DNA of 64,000 bases. Origin: Octopus sinensis (taxonomy: Eukaryota). Under the pieces are notes generated by a model. It ran no database searches and was not told where the DNA came from. It worked only from the letters and a program-made list of their open reading frames with translations. Made by a program: the position numbers and the translations under genes. Positions 2,952-62,865 of the stretch are shown here, one piece after another. The stretch's first letter is position 1, and each line of letters begins with the position of its first letter. The stretch covers positions 84,754,001 to 84,818,000 of the forward strand of contig NC_042997.1 of NCBI RefSeq assembly GCF_006345805.1, given 5' to 3'.

Positions 2952-3158
2952 GGCGAGCTGGCAGGAACGTTAGCACGCCGGGCGAAATGCTTAGTGGTAT
3001 TTCGTCTGTCTTTACGTTCTGAGTTCAAATTCCGCCGAGGTTGACTTTGCCTTCATCCTTTCGGGGTCAATAAATTTAGTACCAGTTGCGTACCAGGGTC
3101 GATCTAATCGATTGGCCCCCTCCCCCAAAATTTCGGGCCTTGGCCTAGAGAAGAAAAG
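2952..3158 (+). mobile_element. Family-1 SINE with 20-bp target-site duplication
   Basis: Full head and body. AATATTCGAATTGAATATAT occurs at 2927-2946 and 3159-3178. Confidence 0.92.
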
Positions 3159-5581: not shown

Positions 5582-6068
5582 GGAGAGAGGGAGAGAGAGA
5601 TATAACACTAGCGATGGTATTTTTAATAGTACTATCGCTCTCATGCATATATATATATATATATATATGAACACATATATGAGTACATTTACATATACAA
5701 ACATATATGTACGAATATATGTATATATGTATATACACATATATGTATGCATGTATGTAAATATATGTGTGTGTGTGCGTGCAATAAAAGCCCAACAACG
5801 CTACATTGAACTATTTTATGAAGGATATTTCCCATTTCATTATTAGTCCGTTGTGGTTCATTTAGAAAAATAATTTCCCGAAACCCAACGAGTTTCAAGA
5901 TTTTCCTACACTTGTCTTCTACTGGAAACGATTTTTCAGGTGGTTGTTATTGGCCTTTTAATGTAGGTGAGAGCCACGGAAATGATAATGTATCTCTTTC
6001 TCATTCATTATCCCCGGACTTCAAATGTTCCTCATCCGCTGACGTCAGCTGTATTATTTATTTACTCA

Positions 6069-6104
<36 letters not shown>

Positions 6105-6138
6105 TATATATATATATATGTGTGTGTGGTGTGTGTGT

Positions 6139-10346: not shown

Positions 10347-10745
10347 TGCAGGAGTGGCTGCTTGGTAAGTAGCTTGTTTACCAACCACATGGTTCCAGGT
10401 TCAATCCCACTGCGTGGCACCTTGGGCAAGAGTCTTCTACTATAGCCTCGGGCTGACCAACGCCTTGTGAGTGGATTTGGTAGACGGAAACTGAATATGT
10501 ATATATATATATATATGCGTGTGTGTGTTTGTGTGTCTGTGTTTGTCCCCCTAGCATTGCTTGACAACCGATGCTGGTGTATTTATGTCCCCGTTACTTA
10601 GCGTTTCGGCAAAACAGACCGATAGAATAAGTACTGGGCTTACAAAAGAATAAGTCCCGGGGTCCAGTTGCTCGATTTAAGGCGGTGCTCCAGCATGGCC
10701 GCAGTCAAATGACTGAAACAAGTAAAAGAGTAAAAGAGAGAGAAA
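10345..10745 (+). mobile_element. Family-2 tRNA-derived SINE (CORE-like CCTTGGGCAAG motif, internal TA/TG microsatellite)
   Basis: Head GGTGCAGGAGTGGCTG...GGTTCAATCCCAC...GGCACCTTGGGCAAG; tail GCATGGCCGCAGTCAAATGACTGAAACAAGTAAAAGAG. Confidence 0.9.
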
Positions 10746-11219: not shown

Positions 11220-12191
11220 AAAAAGTGAAAAAACTACAGAAGGCTCAAACATTTTTTTTTTTTCTCTTATAATGACATAATTTAGAAGAAAGACCGGTTT
11301 CGCGTTTAGCTTTTCAAATTTCTTGCGACGTTATGTTTATGTTGAACAGGGTTATCGTTATGTTTATGTTCAAAAGGGTTCTAAATAAGGGGAGGTAATG
11401 AGTGATTTCTTCCGGTGTAAGGGAGATAATCGCTTAAAAATTTTTTCCTTTCCCTTGGTGTGAATTTCTCTGTATCAGTATGTTGGGATGGTTAAGTCTG
11501 GGCTTGTACTTTTCAATGAAGAATGTTTCCTTGTTTAGTCTAATTTGTGTTGATGATCCGATAGCACATTGGTAAAATGGAAAGATTAAAAATTGTGGTA
11601 GTAGTTGCTTTGCGCATTTCTCAATGTGCTCACTAAAAGGTATCATTCTGTATTCTGGGAATGCAATCTGTTGTCGATACAGTGTGCATCTACGTCTGAG
11701 TGATAGTCCCGTGGATCCCACGTAGTCTTGGTGGCAGCCCGAGCATTTTATGACATAAATTATGTTTTCAGAGGCACAAGTAAAGTTAGATTTGATCTTG
11801 AATTTCTGTCCCTCTTTAAAGAGGAATTCTGATCCTTCTAGCAGGTTTGGACATGTTGCACAGTTCGATCTACCACATTTTTTTACTTTTGCATCCGTAA
11901 TATCAGAAGACAATTTTGCCTTTGTGAGAATCTTTTTAAGTGATTTAGGTTGTTTGTAGCTTTTAATGATTTGGTGTATGTTTAGAATTTCCTTTAATAT
12001 GGGGTCCTTATGAAGTATTGGTCAATTCTAGGTGATGATGGTGAAGGCTTCTTTGTTTCTGGGGTTGTATGTAGATATGTAGGGTAGTATTTTCGGGGAA
12101 GGTGTGTTGTTGTGTTGAACTTTTCTTAAAGTTTCTATGTTGATTTCTGTTGCACGTCTGATCCCATCCTCTATGAGTTGAGCTGAGTAAT
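11220..12191 (-). mobile_element. 5'-truncated Penelope-like retroelement (end of RT thumb/linker, GIY-YIG endonuclease, 3' pLTR-like tail)
   Basis: ORFs 12028-12213 and 11434-11913 are in the same frame, separated by two stops. Motifs: KILPYISTYNP, C-x4-C-x2-C (KCGRSNCATC), NIIYVIKCSGCHQDYVGST (GIY-YIG), RLNKETFFIEKYKPRLN. Confidence 0.9.
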
Positions 12192-13276: not shown

Positions 13277-13448
13277 TCTTTTACTCTTTTATTTGTTTCA
13301 GTTATTTGACTGCGGCCATGCTGGTGCACCGCCTTTAGTTGAGCAAATCGACCCCAGAATTTATTCTTTGTAAGCCTAGTACTTATTTTATCGGTCTATT
13401 TTGCCGAACCGCTAGGTGACGGGGACATAACACACCAGCATACACACA

Positions 13449-13495
<47 letters not shown>

Positions 13496-13668
13496 ATATA
13501 TATATATATATATACGACGAGCTTCTTTCAGTTTCCGTCTACCAAATGCACTCACATGGCTTTGGTCGGCCCGTGGCTATAGTAGAAGACATTTGCCCAA
13601 GATGCCACGCAGTGAGACTGAACCCGGAACCATGTGGCCGGTAAGCAAGCTACTTAACAAACAGCCCC
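13277..13668 (-). mobile_element. Family-2 SINE
   Basis: Reverse complement of the 10345 element along its length. Confidence 0.88.
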
Positions 13669-15628: not shown

Positions 15629-16035
15629 AAGGCAGTGTGTTAGTAGAATCGTTAACATGCTAGGCAAAATAGTTTGCGGCGTTTCGTTTGTCCTTACGGT
15701 CTGAGTTCAAATTCTTCCGACGTCGACTTTGCCTTTCATCCTTTCGGAATCGATAAAATAAGTAGCAGTTGGGCACTTGGGCTGATATAATTGACTTACT
15801 TCTTCCCCTGAAATTGCTGGCCTTGTGCCAAAATTTGAAACCAATATAGATACAAGGCCAAAAATTTGGGTGAAAGCATTAGCCTATGAAATCGAATCCA
15901 GACTGGAACATTATTTCGCCAATCCTGGGAGCATAAAGGCAGAAAGGATCTCAGTGGAATTTCAATGAAAATGTTATGGGTCGTAACTAGATACTACATG
16001 GCATCTTATCTGGTGCTCGAACGATTCTACCGAAA
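15629..16035. mobile_element. Family-1 SINE (+, 15629-15842) tail-to-tail with a degraded copy (-, about 15850-16035)
   Basis: Conserved body motifs and the tail GCCTTGTGCCAAAATTTGAAACC. Confidence 0.75.
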
Positions 16036-27000: not shown

Positions 27001-27387
27001 CTCTTTTTACTCTTTTACTTGTTTCAGTCTGTGACTGTGGCCATGCTGGAGCACCGCCTTTAGTCGGTCAAATCAACCCCAGGACTTATTCTTTGTAAAC
27101 CTAGTACTTATTTTATCGGTCTCTTTTTTGCCGAACCGCTAAGTTACGGGGACGTAAACACACCAACATCGGTTGTCAAGCGATGTTGGGGGGGGAACAG
27201 ACACACAAACACGCACACACACACATACATATATATATACGACGGGATTCTTTCAGTTTCCGTCAACCAAATGCACTCACAAGGCTTTGGTCGGCCCGAG
27301 GCTATAGTAGAAGGTGCCACGCAGTGGGACTGAACCGGAACCATGTGTTTCGTAAGCAAGCCACTTACCACACAGCCACTCCTACGC

Positions 27388-33554: not shown

Positions 33555-33877
33555 TATTTTGTCTTCCATTTGTTTGTCATTGGACTACGGTCATGCTTGG
33601 GTATCATCTCGAAATGTTTTAGTTGAATAAATCGATCACAATGCTTATGTCTTTTGATTTAAAAAAATCTGGTACTTATTTTATCGTTTCTTTACCTAAC
33701 CGCTCAGTTACGAAAACATAAACAAACCAGTATCCGTTGTCAAGCAGATTTGGGCGAGTAACAAACACACACACATGTTCACACACACACACAGACACAT
33801 GCTCACACACACATACACACACACTCACACACATACACACACACTCACACACACACACACATGCTCACATACACACA

Positions 33878-33934
<57 letters not shown>

Positions 33935-34210
33935 GCATGTGGATTTGGTAGACAGAAACTGAAAGACGCCGGTCGTATACATGTATATACATATATATAT
34001 ATATATTTATACATATGCGTGTGTGTGTCTGTGTTTGTCCCCACCACTATCGCTTGACAATCGATATTGGTCTATTTACATCCCCATAACTTAGCGGTTT
34101 GGCAAAAGAGACTAGGCTCACAAAGAATAAGTCCCTCGGTCGATTTGTTCGACTAAAAAGCCGGTGCTCCAGCATGACCGCAGCCAAATGACTGAAACAT
34201 ATAAAAGAAT
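33555..34210. mobile_element. Two family-2 SINE 3' halves in opposite orientation (- 33555-33775, + 33938-34210)
   Basis: Tail motifs on both strands, around an AC/AT microsatellite. Confidence 0.75.
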
Positions 34211-34382
34211 ACGCGCTGAGATGCACGCTTTTTAGAGGTAACAATGTCCCCACGTCCCTAACTCTTCAGTGTCTACTGTTGACTGCTATTTGAGACCTGT
34301 AGAAGAATGAAAGTAATACCACAATTAAAAAAAAAAAAGTAGCAGAATCGTTAACACGCCAAGTAAAATATTGATTTTAAAT

Positions 34383-34670
34383 TTTGACACAAGACCAACA
34401 ACTTCGGATAAGGGATAAATCGATTATATCAACTCCAGCATACAACTGGTACTTATTTTATCGACCCCGAAAGGATGAAAGGCAAAGTCGACCTCGGCGG
34501 AATTTGAACGCAGAACGTAAAAATGAACGAAATGCTGCTAAACATTGTACCCAGTGTGCTAACGATTCTGCCAGCTTGCCACTATTTCGTTCGTATTTAC
34601 GTTCTGAGTTCAAATTCCACCGAAGTCGACTTTGTTTTTCATCTCTTTGGTGTCGATAAAATAAGTATCA
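34383..34670. mobile_element. Head-to-head family-1 SINEs (- 34383-34580, + about 34585-34670)
   Basis: Opposite-strand copies of the body motif separated by only a few bp. Confidence 0.85.
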
Positions 34671-40831: not shown

Positions 40832-41249
40832 ATATAAGTTATAAAATTCATAGATAAGATAATATGAAAATAAATGGATAATACAGTATAAAACAAAATT
40901 ATATTATGGAACAAATCGAGCCAATTGGAAGCAAATAAAAGATACAGTGCCTAAATCAATAAAACGTTGTCGAACGGAAATAACCAAATTGAAAACAGAA
41001 AAATCAAAAATTAACTCAAGTACTGTTTGTTTAGTAGATTATTAAATTAACACATCAATAATATTATTAACAAATCAGTGAAATAGAGGAAAAATCATAT
41101 CGAAAAACAAATGTAGAAATATTAAAAACGCAAAACGAAAAAAAAATTAAACGAAACAAAAGAAAAATATTTCTTTATTTTATTATCTAATAATAATAAA
41201 AATAATAACACCTATAGTATTTGCAATAATAATAAAAATGAAGATAATA

Positions 41250-41325
<76 letters not shown>

Positions 41326-41342
41326 CAACAACAATAATAATA

Positions 41343-41389
<47 letters not shown>

Positions 41390-41810
41390 TATAATAATAA
41401 TAATGATAGTGAAGATGATAATAATAATAGTGAAGATGATAATAATAATACAGACACGTTTTTGTTAAGAATAGATTTGGAAAAATATCGATAATATAAT
41501 TTTGAATATTTTTCCGCGGGCTTATTTCGAATTTGTTTACAGATAATTAACATTGCGAAACACAAACAACATACTAGCATTTATAAATACTCAAAATAAA
41601 TATATAAATAAATAAATAAATAAAATGAAATAAAATGTACAGGCGTGGAATATTTTGTTTACGTTTATGTGTCAAATTTGAAGAGCGTTCTCAGTGCTTT
41701 TATTAAAGGTGGGTAGATTCTCATGTACGCATGGATTTTGTGCTAGGTGAGTTTGTAATTATAATCTTGATGCATTGACATTTTCTACCATTTACACACA
41801 CGCGCACACA

Positions 41811-46728: not shown

Positions 46729-47717
46729 TCTATATACATAAATAGTAATTTATGTCTGTTTGTGACTGTGTATATGTTTGTTACTTTAACTCTTCCGAGA
46801 CTTTCCTACCGATCTTGTTGAAATTTGACACGTGTGTGGTACTTATCTCCATGCTGTCACTTATGGACTTAGAATATAAAAAAAAAAAAAATCGATGATT
46901 TTTTAAATCAACATCTATTTTTCAAAACTCAATAGTGCATTTCAATGCAAATTCTCATATGAATGTTATTTTCTGCTTTAACTTTTAATGTTTCGATCCG
47001 ATTTTCTTGAAATTTTATACACAGATGAAACAAGCGCTATAAAGTTTTACCTAAGCCACTCAAGTAAAGAGTAAGATGTTTTTTTTTATTTTACTGATTA
47101 ACGAAATTTGGCCAAAATTGTTGTGGGGTCAAAATGTTCGTCAATTATTTCAGCATTCTCAGGTTGCTGTAATATGTATTTTTTCAACATCTGCACTTAA
47201 AATTATCAATTCGAAACGTTGCAGCGTTGTGTGCTAATACATGTAGCATGTATTTTATTAACACACTCACTTAAAATTAGCGATTCTAAACGTCGCAACC
47301 TTGTGTGCTAAAACATGTAACATCTATTTTCTTAACACCTGCACTTAAAATTGTCGGTTCTAACCTTTGCAATCGATATTTGAACCTCACGATCAGTGGA
47401 ACTATACCCATGAAACACAGTCGTCAAATAAAATGCCTTTTCTCTAAATAAGTTTTTGTTTACTTTTGAAACTTTACATCTCTTCTTGATGTTTCCATCG
47501 ATTATATACTTGCAACTTTTAACTCATCTGATCAAACAATTGTCATTTTTCGATTCCACACGTATTTATTTGTATTATTGTTTCGTGAATGAATTTGCTT
47601 ACGCCTTCTATTATCTGTCCTATGTCTTGATTTTATTTTTCGTCTGAGAGAAATTAGGCATTGTAATGGGCACTGGGAATATCCCCGCTCCCGTGTCTTA
47701 CCGGGTACCTCAACTAG
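46729..47717 (+). mobile_element. Non-autonomous Helitron-like element, about 990 bp
   Basis: 5' end A^TCTATATACATAAA (46729). 3' end has a GC hairpin CCCG-tgtcttac-CGGG, 8 nt of spacer, then CTAG^T (47714-47717). A^T target with no TSD, and an internal minisatellite. Confidence 0.7.
47168..47374. repeat. 74-bp minisatellite, about 2.8 copies, inside the Helitron
   Basis: Units start at 47168, 47242 and 47316 (TGTA.CAT.TATTTT...CACTTAAAATT...TTGTGTGCTAA.ACA). Confidence 0.85.
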
Positions 47718-48303
47718 TGTTGTTATAAAGATGAGAAATAACTGCAATGGTTAGGGTAATTCTTGTTATATCGCTTCATCTTGCTACTGGTGTAATTCCT
47801 TATTTCTGTCAATGTAGTTCTTTCTTTAACACTTCTCTTTACACTTAAAAGTCAAACTTCTAGCGAATTACTTGAGCTGAAATCAGTTGTGGGAATTTTG
47901 TTCGATTTAACTCTAAGTCATCTTGTTTTAAGAAGCATTTTTCCTCGTAAGACGCTGAATGTAATTCGAAGGAAGATTCCATGTGCCTTTGAGTGTGCGG
48001 ATTTCATAAATAGATTTTATATATTAGGTAATTCTCTATTATTGTGGTTCTTTCCGTTTTTAATTATAATTTTATACACACGCCGCCCCACAAAAAATAA
48101 CACCCATATACGCACACACATACACACACATACACACGCTCACACGCATACACACACACACACACAACACTCACACGCGCGAGAGTACATACACACGCAT
48201 ATAGAGAGCGGGAAAAAGATAAAGGGAAACGGAAAAAGAACGTCGCTGATTTCAGTCTAATATAGGAAAACACAAGTAAAACTCTCGCCTGGGAATACTA
48301 CGC

Positions 48304-48838
48304 CTCAAAAACATCGTCCTTTCGTCGTTGTTTGAACTGAAGAAGAAGCTGAATTATTTGTCAGAGCCATAAATAGATTGAAAATGCAATAAATAGATGA
48401 ATGATAAATAAATAAATTTGGGCTCTTCAACGGGACAATGTTTATGTAGAGCGGCCCAGCTTTAGAGAAGCTTTCAACGTTGACTTGAAGCTGCAACACG
48501 TTATTATGTTGATGGGGAGAATGTACACAAGACAGCTGATGCAATCAACTGTTTCTTGAAAACTTTAGAAATTTACACAGATATGGGCAGATTACCGAAG
48601 CTGAAATAAATGAAAACAAGAAAGTAGCTGACATTTGAGATGCTTATTTCTCACTGCTATTTCTCACCATCGACAAACAGACTGTTATTACAACAGGAAA
48701 GAATACAATAGTACAGTTTATAAATGATTCCTTGTAAGTCGCTCTCAGCACAGCCAGAGCAGTTCCCAAAAGCTATTGATATTAATGGACAGGTTCGTGT
48801 TTCTTTAATGGTGAATGTCATGCTAAATATAGTGCTAT
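48304..48838 (+). pseudogene. NAPA: Decayed intronless alpha-SNAP (NSF attachment protein) copy, probable retrocopy, 3'-truncated
   Basis: Manual translation gives colinear blocks matching alpha-SNAP as I recall it. TEEEAELFVRAINRLKMQ (48336) matches IEEACEIYARAANMFKMA. TGQCLCRAAQL*RSFQR*LEAATRYYVDGENVHKTADAINCFLKTLEIYTDMGR (48430-48591) matches AGNAFCQAAQLH...DAATCFVDAGNAFKKAD..EAINCLMRAIEIYTDMGR. AISHHRQTDCYYNRKEYNSTVYK* (48656) matches [36 protein letters not shown] (48757) matches EQYQKAIDIYEQV, followed by a frameshifted LKYSA. Several stops and frameshifts, and no introns. Confidence 0.88.
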
Positions 48839-49341
48839 AGGTAACCTCTCTCTCTTTCTCTGTCTCTCTTTCTTTCTCTCTCTTTCTCCTTTTGTCTGTC
48901 TGCCCGTCTATCTCTCTCTGTCTCTCTTTCTGTTTCTCTGTCTGTCTGCTTCTCTCTCTCTCTGTGCTCTGTAAGATTACGCTTGCTTATAATCTTATAA
49001 TCCCTCAAATTTGAAACTTCTTATAAACTAACGTCCTCCTGTTAGTTTATGTTATCTTAATACTCACATCCCTTTTAAATAAACCTAAAGAATTGTTTAA
49101 AGAAAATTGAATTGTATTTTATGTGTTCACTGGTGTTGCAAGTCTAATAGTAATGCTATTTGCAACACTAGTGAACGCACACAGACACAAACTCACATAG
49201 ATAAATGTTAATTATTTTTTTATGAAGCCAAAACAATGCGAGTTGTAAAAACTAATACAGATCGTAAATGTAAGGTAAAAGTACATCTCATTGACCTGCA
49301 TTACATTATATGACTTGCATTCTTTTGAAATTATAACAACA

Positions 49342-49500
49342 CTAGCTGAGGTACCCGGTAAGACCCGGGAGCGGGGATATTCCCAGTGCTTAGTTATGAT
49401 GCCCCAGCAACTGGATATAGTTCTCTTCTGCCTCCATTGCATTTCTTATAGGTTGTAATTATTCTTGGTGCTAGGGACAGGAGAAAGAATCTTTACTTAT
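49342..49500 (-). mobile_element. Second Helitron 3' end (short derivative), opposite orientation
   Basis: The reverse strand reads CCCGG-gtctta-CCGGG-tacctcag-CTAG^T. Its terminal 58 bp match 47671-47728 at 56/58. The 5' boundary is uncertain. Confidence 0.6.
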
Positions 49501-49524: not shown

Positions 49525-49922
49525 TCTCTCTCGTTTTTGTTTTCGTCATTAGTCTGTGGTCATGCTGGGGCATCACCTTGAAGGGTGTTAGTCGAACAAG
49601 TAAACCCTAGGACTTATTTCTTTAAACCCTAGTACATATTCTATCGATCTCTTTCGCTGAACCGCTAGATTACTGGGACATAAACACACAAACAGTGGTT
49701 GTTAAGCTATGGTAGGAAACAAATACGGACACAAAGACACGTACACGCGCACGTACACACAAACATATACACACGCATATATGACAGTCTTCTTTCAGTT
49801 TTCGTCTACTAAATCCACTCATAAGGGCTTATAGTAATAGTAAAACATATCCTCAAGGTTCCACGCAGCCCGACTGAACCCGAAACTATGTGGTTGGAAA
49901 GCAAGCTTCTTACCACGCCTCT
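49525..49922 (-). mobile_element. Family-2 SINE, diverged
   Basis: CTTCTTTCAGTTTTCGTCTACTAAATCCACTCA...GGTTGGAAAGCAAGCTTCTTACCAC. Confidence 0.82.
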
Positions 49923-50390: not shown

Positions 50391-50472
<82 letters not shown>

Positions 50473-50564
50473 CGATGACGACGATGATGATGACGACGAT
50501 GATGACGATGATGATGATGACCACGACGATGACGATGATGATAATGATGATGATATACTATTAT

Positions 50565-50639
<75 letters not shown>

Positions 50640-52690: not shown

Positions 52691-53252
52691 AACAGCACAA
52701 GTGCTGTTGCCGGCACCATTGTTTTTCACGTACTTGTTTTCTCAAAGACGTTTCAACCATTATCATTCATCTCTTTTTATACTTTTTATATATATGGGTC
52801 TATACTGTGCAATTTCACCTCACTCCTTGAAGGTATATTGGTGCTATTTCACCAATACTACTTAACTTGGCGATCCTGGGAGTGGAGAGCAAAGTCGACA
52901 GTGAAGTGAATAGAACGCTGAAAGGTAAAGTGAGGAGTGGGGGTGGGGATAAGAAAATACGACAATAAACTTTGTCCGCCATCTTGTTTTTTTCTGGCAG
53001 CCTGCAACTACCTAATATATATTAAAAGCGATGGAAACAATACCAATATTTTTCATATCAACATCGTCATCGTTATCATCAACATCATAATCCTCATCAC
53101 AACTATCACGTCCCTAACCACCACCTGACCCCATCAAGATCATCATGATGATCATCATCATAAACAACATCAACGTCGTTGCTGTCGCAGCTGCAGAATA
53201 TGCAATATTCAAATCAGCAGCAGCGGTATTATTGTTATTATTATTATTATTA

Positions 53253-53300
<48 letters not shown>

Positions 53301-53326
53301 CATCATTATCATTATTATTATTATTA

Positions 53327-53374
<48 letters not shown>

Positions 53375-53780
53375 GTAGTAGTAGTAGTAGTAGTAGTAGT
53401 AGCAGTAGTAACAAACCGGTATGGAACAAGAAGAACACTGCACAGAATATTAAGTATGTTTTCAAGATTATAATGGAGTTTACACAGAAAACAAACAAGT
53501 AGAAAGAAACAAGAGTAATAAAAGAGACAAAAAATAAAAACATTAGAAAAAACAAGACGAAACAAAACAAAGAAACGAAATGAACGTAAGATTTATGATG
53601 GAAGTAATTTATTAACAATATTCAAGTTATACACGAGTGAACAATAATCATTTTTTCATTTGTCTCGCAAGGTCCGAGCTATTGACTTTCGTTCTAATAG
53701 TCTTTCTATCGTTGATGGTATTCTTTAGAACATCATATTAATATATATGTATGTATGTATATATATATGTATATATATGT

Positions 53781-53889
<109 letters not shown>

Positions 53890-53938
53890 GTATATATATA
53901 CATATATGTATACACACATATATATACATACACATATG

Positions 53939-53970
<32 letters not shown>

Positions 53971-54464
53971 TATATACATACACACATATGTATATATATA
54001 TTTATATATTATATATATATATGTATGTATATGTTTCTATGTATCTGTATGTATGAATATATATGCATATGTGTGTATCTAAACTACTATCGAACACAAG
54101 CACACATATAAAAACAGATACACAGGCACGTGCAAACAAAATAAACATGTATGTGTGTGTCTGTATGTGTGTTTGTGTGTGTGTGCCTGTGTGTGAAGAC
54201 GTAGCCTAGTGGTCAGGGCGATGCACTCACGATCACAAGGTCGTGGTTTCACCAGATCAGCGGTGTTGTGACTTTATGCAATATATTTCCTTTCAAGTTG
54301 ACCCGGTACCACTTACCTGTAAATGCGACGAATTGGCATTCCGCTCGGGGAAAATGATGGCCTGCCTGCCTACCCACAAGGAAGGCTACATTTAAAAGCA
54401 ACAACAGTACAAGGAAATGTATCGTTTCCCCAGGTGTGTATATAGCAGCATCCAAGTCTGGTCG

Positions 54465-55674: not shown

Positions 55675-55875
55675 TTAAGGTAGTATTGTCAGCATGTCAG
55701 ATAAAATGCTTTGTGGTATTGCGCGTTTTAACGTTTTGCGTTCAAATTCCGCCGAGATCAACTTAGCCTTCCATTTTATTGCGATCGATAAAATGAGTAC
55801 CAGCTGAGCACTGTCGTCAATTTAATAGACTTCGCCCACCCCCGAAATTGTTGGCCTTGTGCCAAAATTTGAAAC
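55675..55875 (+). mobile_element. Family-1 SINE, diverged
   Basis: GTTCAAATTCCGCCGAG...GGCCTTGTGCCAAAATTTGAAACC. Confidence 0.8.
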
Positions 55876-56111
55876 CATTATTACTTTGTTCATTAACATT
55901 TAACTAATTAATCGATAGTTTGATTAATCGTTCCGTCCAATTAGTCAATCAGCTAGGTTAGTCTGGTCATTCACTCGCCATCCACTACCTCAGAGATTAC
56001 ATACTCTCTCTACTTCAGGCCTACCGCAGGCCTCACTTCCTGCTTACCAGTTTAAAGGTTTTATATTATATTTATACGGAGATGTATGAGAATGTATGTT
56101 GAAGAGAGGGG

Positions 56112-56356: not shown

Positions 56357-57142
56357 GTATGTATGTATATACACACATAGATATATGTATAGGTATATAT
56401 ATATATGTGTGTGTGTGAGTGTGTGTGGTAAAAGAAAGATGGAACAGTTCTATATTTAAGAAATGAGGATACGAGAATTTTTATTAATCACTACAATTGT
56501 TATACATATATATATGTGTGTGTACGTACACGCACACATGTATACATGAGTGAGTGCGTGCGTGTACATCTGTGACAGTCTTTCTCTGCACAATTCCATT
56601 TATTCCCATGCTATTGCCCAATGCAAAGCTATATCTTTTGACAATTGTTTTTTTTTTTATTTTGCGAAGTGGATCGACCTGAAACCATGCGATTGCAAAG
56701 TTACATCCTTAAAAAAGTTGCGGAATTGTAAAGAGAGTTAATCGAAATGCCTTATTTTTATTCTAGCTCCTAATGTTCTGAGTACAAATAGACGCTGAAC
56801 AACTTAGTCTTTTATTTCTTCTGGGGTCGATGGAATAATGTAAATCAAGTGCTGAATCAAACTGAACATGATCTGCTGAATGAAGAGTGAGAAGACCAAG
56901 CTGTCCACTTTTGCTCTCGATTGCACGCCTACAAACACACACACACACACATGTAGCTTTTAAAAATTATTCCTTTGTCTGTAAAAGCGATAAAGATAAA
57001 TAGATATTTAATGCTTATTCTTTTGTCAATAAAATTATTTAGAATCCATTTTCTTAGTAAAATAGATAATAAATAATAAATTTAAACGAATTTTCTAGTT
57101 TTTCGATTAAATATGGTTTAATCAATATTTAAATAAGAGTTA

Positions 57143-57357
57143 GGGTGGTGAGCTGGCAGAATCGTTCTCAAACCGTGCAAAATGCTTAGCGTGTTTTTGT
57201 CCGTCTTTACATTCTGAGTTCAAATACCGCCGAGGTCGTCTTAGCTTTTCATTCTTTCGGAGTCGATGAAATAGGTACCAGTTGAACACTGGGGTCGATC
57301 TAATGTCTAACCTTACCTCACTAGTTTCAGGCCTTGTGGCTATAGGAAAAAAGGATT
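57143..57357 (+). mobile_element. Family-1 SINE
   Basis: GGTGAGCTGGCAGAATCGTT...GAGTTCAAATACCGCCGAGGTCG...GGCCTTGTGGCTATAGGAAAAAAGGATT. Confidence 0.85.
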
Positions 57358-59419: not shown

Positions 59420-60520
59420 TTGCACGCGAGTAAAACAACTAGGACTCAACAAAGAAAATCGTAAAGAACTGCTGGTTGTAAAGAAGTGGTAAACTCTCCT
59501 TTCTTCCTACGTGTCATATTAATTTTTCTCTACTATGCATACAACACACACGAGAAATTATTTAATCACCATAAAGTAAAATTTTCCTATTCGACTACCA
59601 GAAATTTGGCTGATATTATGACAGCACATAACAAAAGTAAAATTAGGACAATATCGCAACCCAAAATTGATAAACACAAGTAGGATCGATGAGGTCGAGT
59701 GTGAGATAAAATTGAATGCTAATTTTCCTGACCTAGTTTTTTTATATTTTAGGTAAAAGTAATTCCAACAGAGAAATTGATAGTAACTTTAAGATAACAT
59801 CTAGTAATAATATTGATCATAATACTGCTAATAATCTTGGTTTAAAACCTAATTCTGAAAGCAGAATTAGTACTAGATCCTTTAACCGTGAGTGGTAGGG
59901 TAAATAAACGCCTTTGTAATTCCAAAATCAAATTTAGGTGTCTTTCAGAAAATCAGTGTTTAGGGAAGAATATAGTGAATCAATATATGGTAATTGCAGT
60001 GAATCGTACACATAATTACATAGTTTTCATCACTACAATTTGGAAAATTAGATTATATAACCATTCTTCTTCATTTAAGTTTAGGAAAAATGTAATTCTT
60101 CGAACCTGTGATTTGAAAGACAAAAACATTAACTACGATATAAAATGGTCCATTATCACTTACTTACCATTGTGCTATGCTGGTTATTTTAAATGTTTAT
60201 TAAGGCGGCGAGCTGGCAGAAACGTTAGCACGCCGGGCGAAATGAGTAGCCGTATCTTGTCTGCCGTTACGTTCTGAGTTCAAATTCCGCCGAGGTCGAC
60301 TTTGCCTTTCATCCTTTCGGGATCGATAAATTAAGTACCAGTTACCCACTGGAGTCAATGTAATCGACTTCATACCTTTGTCTGTCCTTGTTTGTCCCCT
60401 CTATGTTTAGCTCCTTGTGGGTAATAAAGAAATAGGTTATTTTAAATGTCACCTTTGCCTAGAGGAAATGTATTATATAATCACTTTATTGCGGAAGCAT
60501 GATCACTCTTGAACTTTAGC
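59420..60520 (+). pseudogene. Degraded Penelope-like element (linker plus GIY-YIG), second subfamily, interrupted by a SINE
   Basis: HEKLFNHHKVKFSYSTTRNLADIMTAHNKSKI; CLSENQCLGKNIV; WKIRLYNHSSSF; DLKDKNINYDIKWSI. After the SINE it resumes as GYFKCHLCLEEMYYII, matching the PLE C-x-LCL-x-EK motif. Confidence 0.75.
60197..60434 (+). mobile_element. Young family-1 SINE inserted in the PLE remnant, 15-bp TSD
   Basis: Near-consensus sequence. GGTTATTTTAAATGT occurs at 60182-60196 and 60435-60449. Confidence 0.93.
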
Positions 60521-62492: not shown

Positions 62493-62865
62493 TAGGCGCA
62501 GGCGTTGCTGTGTGGTAACCATATGGTTCTGGGCTCAGTTTCACTAGGTGGCACCTTGGGCAAGTATCTTCTACTACATCTTCGGGCTGACCAAAGTCTT
62601 GTGAGTGGATTTGGTTGACGGAAACTGAAAGAAGCCCATCGTACATATGTGTGTGTTTGTTGTTATGTTTGTCCCCCACCATCGCTTGACAACTGATGTT
62701 GGCGTGTTTACGCTCTCGTAAATTAGCAGAAGAGATCGATAGAATAGATACTAAGCTTAGCAAAAAATTAATTATTGCGGTTGATTCATTGGACTAAAAA
62801 TTCTCCAAGGTTGTGCCCAGCATGGCCGCAGTCTAATGACTAAAACAAATAAAAGATAAAAAATA
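62493..62865 (+). mobile_element. Family-2 SINE
   Basis: TAGGCGCAGGCGTTGCTGTGTGGTAA...GGCACCTTGGGCAAG...GCATGGCCGCAGTCTAATGACT. Confidence 0.88.

What the first reader, a model, noticed from the sequence alone, without database searches (positions are those of the whole stretch)
48304..48838. Hidden alpha-SNAP (NAPA) retrocopy not visible in the ORF track
Seen: four to five colinear peptide blocks spread over three frames reproduce roughly residues 20-205 of alpha-SNAP, including EIYTDMGR, AI.H..Q..YY and EQ..KAIDI, with no introns. An AT-rich insert interrupts it near 48390-48418, and it stops at a CT microsatellite. Knowledge: alpha-SNAP is the conserved NSF adaptor for SNARE disassembly, and vertebrate NAPA has several introns over this span. 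Inference: an old retroposed copy of a vesicle-fusion gene mRNA, the only host-gene-derived sequence I found in the window.
Basis: partly seen in the sequence, partly recalled or inferred. Interest (0 to 1): 0.7.

Follow-up and report, generated by a model that had tools for sequence, protein, structure and literature searches.

The report
Decayed octopus alpha-SNAP processed pseudogene
This stretch is a dead, intron-less copy of the first two thirds of the octopus alpha-SNAP (vesicle-fusion adaptor) messenger RNA that was pasted back into the genome long ago; it is real, but it is an ordinary kind of genomic fossil.

Summary
Window 48269-48840 (+), possibly from 48262, is colinear with alpha-SNAP. 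A frameshift-aware alignment scores 221 against a null of 37 +/- 6, and tblastn gives E = 6e-11.

The source gene is cephalopod, not vertebrate. The raw DNA scores best against squid and octopus alpha-SNAP. It is 81% identical in DNA to the spliced Octopus vulgaris CDS (positions 13 to about 612).

I mapped the parental gene in O. vulgaris, O. sinensis, O. bimaculoides and Argonauta hians. All four have 9 coding exons and the same 8 intron positions. The copy crosses seven of these positions with no inserted base. Five are seamless and two lie inside small deletions of 13 and 9 nt. About 16.9 kb of O. vulgaris intron is absent.

The copy carries 5 in-frame stops and at least 7 frameshifts. Changes are spread evenly over codon positions, and dN/dS is 0.61 against 0.02-0.10 between functional orthologues. 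It arose on the Octopus lineage after the split from Argonauta and well before O. vulgaris and O. bimaculoides separated.

The C-terminal third, the 3'UTR, a poly(A) tail and target-site duplications are all missing. The copy ends in a CT microsatellite.

Verdict: a processed pseudogene. One unexplained detail is a 72-nt inverted repeat that brackets the locus.

The parts
48269..48840 (+). Body of the alpha-SNAP processed pseudogene. It is colinear with spliced octopus CDS positions 13 to about 612 (residues about 5-204 of 293).
   Evidence: The nucleotide alignment to the O. vulgaris spliced CDS gives 425/524 = 81.1% identity. The protein-level frameshift-aware alignment to P0123 gives 98/160 identities, 5 stops and at least 7 frameshifts.
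48262..48268 (+). Possible relic of the start codon region (ATAGGAAA against parental ATGGCAAA). This is tentative.
   Evidence: Direct reading. Homology further upstream into the parental 5' flank is not significant.
48269..48334 (+). Exon-1-derived part (CDS 13-97). The alignment here is gappy. The exon1/exon2 junction lies inside a 13-nt deletion after 48334.
48335..48427 (+). Exon-2-derived part (CDS about 111-178). It contains the AT-rich insert. The exon2/exon3 junction is contiguous at 48427/48428.
48389..48419 (+). AT-rich (ATAA)n-like insert. It has 31 nt where the parent has 9 and carries two of the in-frame stops.
   Evidence: The local 13-nt duplicate GCCATAAATAGAT / GCAATAAATAGAT is family D15.
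48428..48540 (+). Exon-3-derived part (CDS 179-288). The exon3/exon4 junction lies inside a 9-nt in-frame deletion.
   Evidence: There is also a blastn hit to L001 exon 3 only.
48541..48585 (+). Exon-4-derived part (CDS 298-342). The exon4/exon5 junction is contiguous at 48585/48586, inside the EIYTDMGR coding stretch.
48586..48655 (+). Exon-5-derived part. It has a deletion of about 25 nt (codons FTIAAKHH) between short direct repeats, and a 12-13-nt tandem duplication (GCTTATTTCTCAC/TGCTATTTCTCAC, about 48642-48667). The exon5/exon6 junction is contiguous at 48655/48656.
48656..48711 (+). Exon-6-derived part. The exon6/exon7 junction is contiguous at 48711/48712.
48712..48792 (+). Exon-7-derived part. 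The exon7/exon8 junction is contiguous at 48792/48793.
48793..48840 (+). Exon-8-derived part. Only the first 50 nt or so of the 174-nt exon are present. Homology then dissolves into the microsatellite.
   Evidence: No residues 201-293 are found anywhere in the window.
48846..48963 (.). CT-rich microsatellite that forms the 3' breakpoint of the copy.
   Evidence: TRF. The parental CDS at about 615-640 is itself CT-rich, so it may have seeded the array. That last point is inference.
48113..48176 (.). CA microsatellite about 90 bp upstream of the 5' end. This is context and not part of the copy.
   Evidence: TRF. Tandem repeats cover 14.8% of the window, so adjacency is not informative.
47657..47728 (+). 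Left arm of a 72-nt inverted repeat bracketing the locus. Its relation to the copy is unresolved.
49331..49403 (-). Right arm of the same inverted repeat, about 93% identical to the left arm.

Best explanation
This is a processed pseudogene (a dead retrocopy) of the octopus alpha-SNAP gene.

Proposed history:
- A mature, fully spliced alpha-SNAP mRNA was reverse-transcribed and inserted into a germ-line chromosome. This happened in an ancestor on the Octopus lineage, after its split from Argonauta and well before O. vulgaris and O. bimaculoides diverged. The enzyme was presumably the reverse transcriptase/endonuclease of a non-LTR (LINE) retrotransposon.
- The copy had no promoter of its own and has drifted neutrally since. 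It has accumulated about 0.18 substitutions per site, 5 stop codons, at least 7 frameshifting indels, an AT-rich microsatellite-like insert, a small tandem duplication and several deletions.
- Its 3' third (CDS beyond about 612-637, the 3'UTR and the poly(A)) was lost later. The most likely cause is a deletion or rearrangement at the CT microsatellite that now bounds it.

It cannot encode a SNAP protein.

Shown: identity, lineage of the parent, absence of seven introns, disablement and neutral evolution, and relative age. Inferred: the LINE-mediated mechanism, the secondary loss of the 3' end, and the lack of function.
For: Identity:
- Frameshift-aware score 221 against null 37 +/- 6, and tblastn E = 6e-11.

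Lineage:
- Among 157 alpha/beta-SNAPs, the raw DNA scores highest with squid (285) and octopus (280). The next best is 236 and vertebrates score about 221.
- At diagnostic CDS sites the copy is Octopus rather than Argonauta 48:8, and octopod rather than squid 58:9.
- It carries 19 of 26 Octopus-stem derived states, against 3 ancestral and 4 other.

Intron loss:
- An exact spliced mapping gives 9 coding exons with introns after CDS 98, 178, 295, 342, 420, 476, 561 and 735. The positions are the same in O. vulgaris, O. sinensis, O. bimaculoides and Argonauta hians.
- The copy aligns to the spliced CDS at 81.1% identity.
- There are no inserted bases at any of the seven junctions it spans. Five are contiguous, at 48427/8, 48585/6, 48655/6, 48711/2 and 48792/3.
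- blastn of the window against the 23-24 kb parental loci hits exons only, plus generic repeats.

Pseudogene status:
- 5 stops and at least 7 frameshifts.
- Differences by codon position are 0.177/0.166/0.224.
- Private changes at sites invariant in five functional genes are 14%/16%/18% at positions 1/2/3.
- dN/dS is 0.61 with dN 0.186. Ovul-Obim gives dN/dS 0.10 with dN 0.005, and Ovul-Argonauta gives dN/dS 0.02 with dN 0.024.

Age:
- The pair dS of 0.31 far exceeds the Ovul-Obim dS of 0.05 and is well below the Ovul-Argonauta dS of 1.04.

Genome context:
- The window's interspersed repeats are shared with Octopus loci and hardly at all with Argonauta.
- LINEs, notably the RTE clade, are documented as transcribed and polymorphic in Octopus (PMC9115989).
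Against: - No poly(A) tract and no target-site duplication could be found. The only 15-nt direct repeat, at 48189 and 49767, is CA-rich low complexity.
- The copy keeps its 5' end and lacks its 3' end. This is the opposite of the usual 5'-truncated LINE product, so a second event has to be invoked.
- The LINE clade with documented activity in Octopus is RTE. From general knowledge, RTE does not depend on poly(A) tails and is not a known producer of processed pseudogenes.
- I could not locate the window in a genome assembly. 'Unlinked to the parent' therefore rests only on the absence of parental intron and flank sequence.
Confidence: 0.92

Rival explanations
1. This is a secondary DNA-level copy. 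The sequence did begin as a retrocopy elsewhere, but the fragment now in this window arrived by DNA-level duplication or by capture inside a mobile or duplicated unit. The 1.75-kb unit bounded by the 72-nt inverted repeats (47657-49403) is a candidate. This would explain why it is an internal fragment with neither poly(A) nor target-site duplication.
For: - A 72-nt inverted repeat at about 93% identity brackets the fragment and is unique in the window.
- The fragment lacks its 3' end, a poly(A) tail and target-site duplications.
Against: - The inverted repeat has no homology beyond its arms and no target-site duplication outside them.
- No second copy of the arms or of the alpha-SNAP fragment exists in the window or in four octopod loci.
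- Microsatellite-associated deletion is a simpler explanation in a window where 14.8% is tandem repeat.
Confidence: 0.07
2. It is a functional retrogene, or an exon of a functional gene or lncRNA, that still uses the SNAP-derived sequence.
For: None at the protein level. A non-coding role (antisense or small-RNA source) cannot be excluded from sequence alone.
Against: - There are 5 in-frame stops and at least 7 frameshifts over 176 codons, and the longest intact block is about 60 codons.
- Substitutions are uniform across codon positions, and dN is about 8 to 37 times that of functional orthologue pairs.
- One third of the protein is missing.
Confidence: 0.01
3. It is a chance similarity, or an assembly or cDNA-contamination artefact.
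For: None.
Against: - The score is more than 30 standard deviations above the null.
- 81% DNA identity holds over about 525 aligned bases of the octopus CDS.
- A cDNA contaminant would be near-identical to the CDS and free of stops and frameshifts. This copy is 19% diverged and embedded in typical repeat-rich Octopus sequence.
Confidence: 0.001

Closest known systems
Processed pseudogenes (retropseudogenes) generated by LINE machinery, as catalogued in mammals and other animals
   Same: It is an intron-less, colinear copy of a spliced mRNA from a multi-exon housekeeping or neuronal gene. It sits in unrelated repeat-rich DNA, is riddled with stops and frameshifts, and evolves neutrally.
   Different: It lacks the 3' end, poly(A) tail and target-site duplications that define a typical L1 product, and it retains the 5' end instead. 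It lies in an octopus genome, where the LINE with documented activity is of the RTE clade (PMC9115989). I found no published catalogue of retrocopies for this group.
Octopus alpha-SNAP gene (O. vulgaris CAI9730361.1 / O. sinensis XP_029642560.1, P0123; O. bimaculoides XP_052827596.1, P0186)
   Same: It is the source of the copy. DNA identity is 81% over CDS 13-612, the copy carries 19 of 26 Octopus-stem derived substitutions, and conceptual amino-acid identity is 61%.
   Different: The parental gene spans 17-18 kb with 8 introns and an intact 293-codon frame. The copy is about 575 bp, has no introns, is truncated and is disabled.
Gene-fragment capture by TIR DNA transposons (Pack-MULE/Pack-TYPE-like transduplication)
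   Same: A host-gene fragment sits between inverted repeats about 1.6 kb apart.
   Different: No target-site duplication, no subterminal homology and no additional copies were detected. Captured fragments are normally genomic and retain introns, whereas this one is spliced.

Membership tests
Processed pseudogene / retrocopy | Colinear homology to the mature (spliced) mRNA of a multi-exon parental gene | tested here: met
   81.1% identity to the spliced O. vulgaris CDS positions 13-612. The parent has 9 coding exons.
Processed pseudogene / retrocopy | Precise absence of the parental introns | tested here: met
   Seven intron positions are spanned with no inserted bases at any. Five junctions are contiguous and two lie inside 13-nt and 9-nt deletions. 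The intron positions are conserved in four octopod genomes. There are no intron hits by blastn.
Processed pseudogene / retrocopy | 3' poly(A) tract following the mRNA 3' end | tested here: inconclusive
   No poly(A) is present. However, the whole 3' part of the mRNA (CDS beyond about 612-637 and the 3'UTR) is missing, so the site where it would be is gone.
Processed pseudogene / retrocopy | Flanking target-site duplications | tested here: inconclusive
   No convincing direct repeat flanks the copy. The only 15-nt match is CA-rich low complexity. With one end lost and about 18% neutral decay, a short duplication would not be recognisable.
Processed pseudogene / retrocopy | Location unlinked to the parental locus | tested here: inconclusive
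   The 64-kb window holds no other alpha-SNAP exon, intron or flank sequence. I could not obtain the chromosomal position of the window.
Processed pseudogene / retrocopy | Disabling mutations and neutral substitution pattern (this feature defines 'pseudogene' as opposed to 'retrogene') | tested here: met
   5 stops and at least 7 frameshifts. Private changes are 14%/16%/18% at codon positions 1/2/3. dN/dS is 0.61 against 0.02-0.10 for functional pairs.
SNAP protein family (Pfam PF14938) | Sequence match to the family profile | tested here: inconclusive
   The best intact block scores 23.8 bits (E = 3.6e-5), just under the 25-bit gathering cut-off. The same block hits PDB alpha-SNAP at E = 4e-10. 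It is a relic of a family member, not a member able to encode the fold.
TIR DNA transposon carrying a captured gene fragment | Terminal inverted repeats with a target-site duplication immediately outside | tested here: not met
   The inverted repeat is present (72 nt, about 93% identity), but there is no duplication outside the arms and no homology beyond them.
TIR DNA transposon carrying a captured gene fragment | Multiple dispersed copies of the unit | not testable with these tools
   No other copy exists in the window or in four 23-24 kb octopod loci. No whole Octopus genome could be searched.

The most novel reading that the evidence does not exclude
The alpha-SNAP relic may not be a simple LINE-made insertion that later lost its tail. 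In this reading it is a spliced-mRNA-derived fragment that sits as a passenger inside a 1.75-kb inverted-repeat-bounded unit (47657-49403), or it was made by a poly(A)-independent (RTE-type) retrotransposition or template-switch event. Either case would explain a copy that is complete at the 5' end, truncated at the 3' end, lacks a poly(A) tail and ends in a microsatellite. It would give a first handle on how retrocopies form in cephalopod genomes, whose active LINEs are not L1.
Probability: 0.08. Interest if true: 0.45.

Novelty: new member of a known kind. Interest (0 to 1): 0.15.

Why it matters
Processed pseudogenes are commonplace, and a single decayed one changes nothing about SNARE biology. 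It has three modest uses.

- It is a neutral-rate yardstick for Octopus. The relic has about 0.18 substitutions per site of private decay, against a parental synonymous divergence of about 0.12 over the same interval (inferred).
- It is a predicted shared-derived insertion that could serve as a clade marker within Octopodidae.
- It is one data point on whether and how mRNAs are retroposed in genomes dominated by RTE-type LINEs. I found no published survey of retrocopies in cephalopods.

The relic shows no excess of A>G differences (6 of 96). It therefore does not preserve a fossil of the heavy mRNA editing known in coleoids.

Tried and rejected
- A database search with the stitched pseudogene peptide collected only 4 candidates, and none was significant. 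The decayed sequence shares too few exact words with the index.
- A search with rat alpha-SNAP returned only vertebrates in the 120 rows listed. A chimeric query was needed to surface the cephalopod proteins. Because that query was partly repaired, I re-tested the ranking with the raw DNA.
- I tried to identify the organism through a window ORF. The 159-aa ORF at 11434-11913(-) is not on record.
- An apparent extension of homology about 30 nt into the parental 5' flank is not significant: score 15 against null 13-16.
- A 1-kb local match between the parental 3' flank and window 53191-54184 is TA/TG microsatellite only. With low-complexity filtering nothing remains.
- I searched for the missing C-terminal third (residues 201-293) on both strands of the whole window. 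The best score of 53 (median 30) is within the range of the null maxima.
- Candidate target-site duplication: the only 15-nt direct repeat (48189 and 49767) is CA-rich and lies inside a dispersed repeat.
- Rfam and tRNA scans of the flanks gave only sub-threshold miRNA-model hits on a CA repeat and on a hairpin.
- Flanking microsatellites as a mechanistic signature: rejected as uninformative, because arrays occur about every 440 bp in this window.
- RNA-editing fossil: no A>G excess.
- I considered alternative splicing as the cause of the deletions at junctions 1 and 3 and in exon 5. The exon-5 deletion starts 6-8 nt inside the exon, between short direct repeats. The junction-3 deletion has no GT donor. 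They are best read as ordinary deletions.

Full report
**What is there**

The window is AT-rich eukaryotic DNA (GC about 0.34). Tandem repeats cover 14.8% of it. No Rfam family reaches its threshold and no tRNA is found.

I took a full-length alpha-SNAP reference from the PDB (chain 9ojz_J/3j96_G, sequence read from the printed alignment).
- tblastn against the whole window places residues 59-198 at 48424-48825 with E = 6e-11. Residues 39-54 lie at 48339-48386 in another frame.
- A frameshift-aware protein-to-DNA alignment that I wrote covers residues 20-202 at 48301-48836, with 81/172 identities.
- Its score of 221 compares with 37.3 +/- 5.7 (maximum 67) for shuffled protein, 42 for the reversed protein, 33 for the opposite strand, and at most 56 for 206 other tiles of the window.

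**Whose gene it was**

- A first database search with the decayed peptide failed. A search with rat alpha-SNAP listed only vertebrates.
- A query that kept the relic's own residues and filled broken spots with pan-metazoan words brought up Doryteuthis pealeii SNAP (P0121) first and Octopus vulgaris alpha-SNAP (P0123) sixth.
- That query was partly repaired, so I re-scored the raw window DNA against 157 retrieved SNAP proteins. Squid scored 285 and octopus 280. The next best was 236, then a gastropod at 231 and a bivalve at 230. Vertebrates scored about 221 and the median was 202.

The source was a cephalopod gene.

**The parental gene and its introns**

The octopus protein is encoded on chromosome-scale records of O. 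vulgaris (L001) and O. sinensis (L002). Cluster members gave O. bimaculoides (L003), Argonauta hians (L004) and a squid-type mRNA contig (L005).

I computed exact spliced alignments, requiring GT..AG introns and a translation identical to the protein. They give 9 coding exons with introns after CDS positions 98, 178, 295, 342, 420, 476, 561 and 735 in all four octopod genomes. Intron lengths range from 129 to 9988 bp. These introns therefore predate the Octopus-Argonauta split and were present in the source gene.

**Intron loss**

- Aligned to the spliced O. vulgaris CDS, window 48269-48840 matches CDS 13 to about 612 at 425/524 = 81.1% identity.
- Seven intron positions fall inside this span, and none has an inserted base.
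- The flanking exon bases are directly adjacent at 48427/8, 48585/6, 48655/6, 48711/2 and 48792/3. The other two junctions lie inside deletions of 13 and 9 nt.
- In O. vulgaris these seven introns total 16,876 bp.
- blastn of the window against the parental loci hits only exons, plus dispersed repeats and microsatellites.

This is the decisive evidence for an RNA intermediate.

**Disablement and neutral decay**

- Against the octopus protein, the relic has 98/160 identical residues and at least seven frameshifts. It has five in-frame stops, with codon ends at 48400, 48415, 48465, 48483 and 48727.
- Other lesions include a 31-for-9-nt AT-rich insert at 48389-48419, a deletion of about 25 nt removing FTIAAKHH, and a 12-13-nt tandem duplication near 48642-48667.
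- Differences from the parent are nearly even across codon positions, at 0.177/0.166/0.224.
- At 373 sites invariant in five functional cephalopod genes, the relic differs at 59 (15.8%, JC 0.18). The rates are 14%, 16% and 18% at positions 1, 2 and 3.
- Nei-Gojobori dN/dS is 0.61 (dN 0.186, dS 0.307). The value is 0.10 for O. vulgaris-O. bimaculoides and 0.02 for O. vulgaris-Argonauta.
- GC fell from 0.406 to 0.381, moving towards the genomic background. A>G changes are not enriched (6 of 96).

**When it happened**

- The relic is equally distant from the three Octopus species (p = 0.189-0.194). It is more distant from Argonauta (0.272) and from the squid-type mRNA (0.333).
- At sites separating Octopus from Argonauta it has the Octopus state 48 times against 8. 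At Octopoda-versus-squid sites it is octopod 58:9.
- Of 26 substitutions polarised to the Octopus stem, it has the derived state at 19, the ancestral state at 3 and another base at 4.
- If the relic's own branch is taken as neutral (about 0.18), the parental lineage contributed about 0.12 synonymous substitutions per site since retroposition. That is several times the per-lineage O. vulgaris-O. bimaculoides value (dS 0.05 in total) and about a quarter of the per-lineage Octopus-Argonauta value (dS 1.04 in total) (the partition is inference).

The insertion should therefore be shared by these Octopus species and absent from Argonauta. The window's dispersed repeats agree with this. They are shared with the Octopus loci (16-37 HSPs covering 2-4 kb of the window) and barely with Argonauta (7 HSPs, 481 bases).

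**The ends**

- At the 5' end, DNA homology reaches CDS 13 at 48269. ATAGGAAA at 48262 may be the relic of ATGGCAAA. Homology with the 100 nt upstream of the parental ATG is not significant.
- At the 3' end, homology stops at about CDS 612-637 and runs into a CT microsatellite at 48846-48963.
- The parental sequence at that point (TCATTTCTTTCGAGCTGCTCTCTGTC) is itself CT-rich and may have seeded the array (inference).
- Nothing corresponding to residues 201-293 or to the parental 3' flank exists anywhere in the window.
- There is no poly(A) tract and no credible target-site duplication.

A copy that is complete at the 5' end and truncated at the 3' end is the reverse of the usual LINE product. 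A later deletion is therefore the simplest addition to the story.

**An unexplained neighbour**

A 72-nt inverted repeat brackets the CA microsatellite, the relic and the CT microsatellite. Its arms lie at 47657-47728 and 49331-49403 and are about 93% identical.
- It has no other copy in the window or in the octopod loci.
- It shows no homology beyond the arms and no duplication outside them.

It could be the remains of an element that hosted or carried the relic, or a local inverted duplication. I could not decide without a whole genome.

**Comparison with what is known**

The feature behaves like, and meets the defining criteria of, a processed pseudogene. Spliced-mRNA colinearity, precise intron absence, and disablement with neutral drift were all tested and met. 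The poly(A) tail and target-site duplication were tested but are uninformative because one end is lost.

The LINE with documented transcription and insertion polymorphism in Octopus is of the RTE clade (PMC9115989). Full-text searches found no paper cataloguing retrocopies or processed pseudogenes in octopus or cephalopods.

**Verdict**

This is a new instance of a very well-known kind of sequence, of low general interest. It yields testable predictions about orthologous presence in Octopus genomes and leaves a small open question about its missing tail and the flanking inverted repeat.

Noticed in passing
window 47657-47728 and 49331-49403: A 72-nt inverted repeat, about 93% identical and 1602 bp apart, encloses the alpha-SNAP relic and both flanking microsatellites. 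It is unique in the window and absent from four octopod loci. It shows no homology beyond the arms and no target-site duplication.
   Followed up: partly
window 49122-49179: A near-perfect 20-nt stem hairpin (TGTGTTCACTGGTGTTGCAA ... TTGCAACACTAGTGAACGCA, 18-nt loop). Its only Rfam similarity is a sub-threshold mir-153 hit (21 bits against a gathering score of 54, E = 0.84).
   Followed up: partly
window 49536-49916; also 27035-27371, 10360-10721, 13284-13659, 62668-62849, 33569-34199: A dispersed repeat family of about 380 bp, with copies 65-71% identical to one another. It is also present upstream of the O. vulgaris alpha-SNAP gene (L001 about 894-1460). Its translations recur in several spurious ORFs (motif ...RLPNALTRLWSARGYSRR...).
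   Followed up: partly
window 15645-15848, 2761-2916, 2969-3144, 55682-55881, 34372-34582, 57122-57296, 60201-60370 and others: A SINE-like repeat of about 200 bp is present at many sites in the window, and in L001 at about 47-268 and 5893-6114, at 72-79% identity. It is shared with the Octopus loci but hardly with Argonauta.
   Followed up: partly
window 54196-54280: This sequence resembles a tRNA-derived SINE head (GTAGCCTAGTGGTCAGGGC...GGTCGTGGTTTCACC) directly after a long TA/TG microsatellite. ARAGORN does not call a tRNA there.
   Followed up: no
window 11437-12021 (-): This 195-codon open frame is the longest non-repetitive one in the window. Its 159-aa ORF (11434-11913) has a weak, sub-threshold GIY-YIG endonuclease hit (14.8 bits, E = 0.036), but the full 195-codon frame gave no Pfam match at E <= 0.05. 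It may be the remnant of a Penelope-like or other GIY-YIG-bearing element. The exact product is not on record in the public gene index.
   Followed up: partly
L001-L004 (octopod alpha-SNAP loci): All eight coding-region intron positions and phases of alpha-SNAP are identical in O. vulgaris, O. sinensis, O. bimaculoides and Argonauta hians, while intron lengths vary widely. For example, intron 4 is 302, 298, 2087 and 1292 bp, and intron 8 is 675, 665, 1376 and 129 bp.
   Followed up: yes
window 50391-50639, 53230-53410, 41212-41580: Long trinucleotide arrays (ATA/ATG/ACG, ATT, AGT and CTT-type) generate long spurious poly-M/I/L/N open reading frames. Overall TRF finds 193 arrays merging into 124 intervals, about one every 440 bp.
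   Followed up: partly
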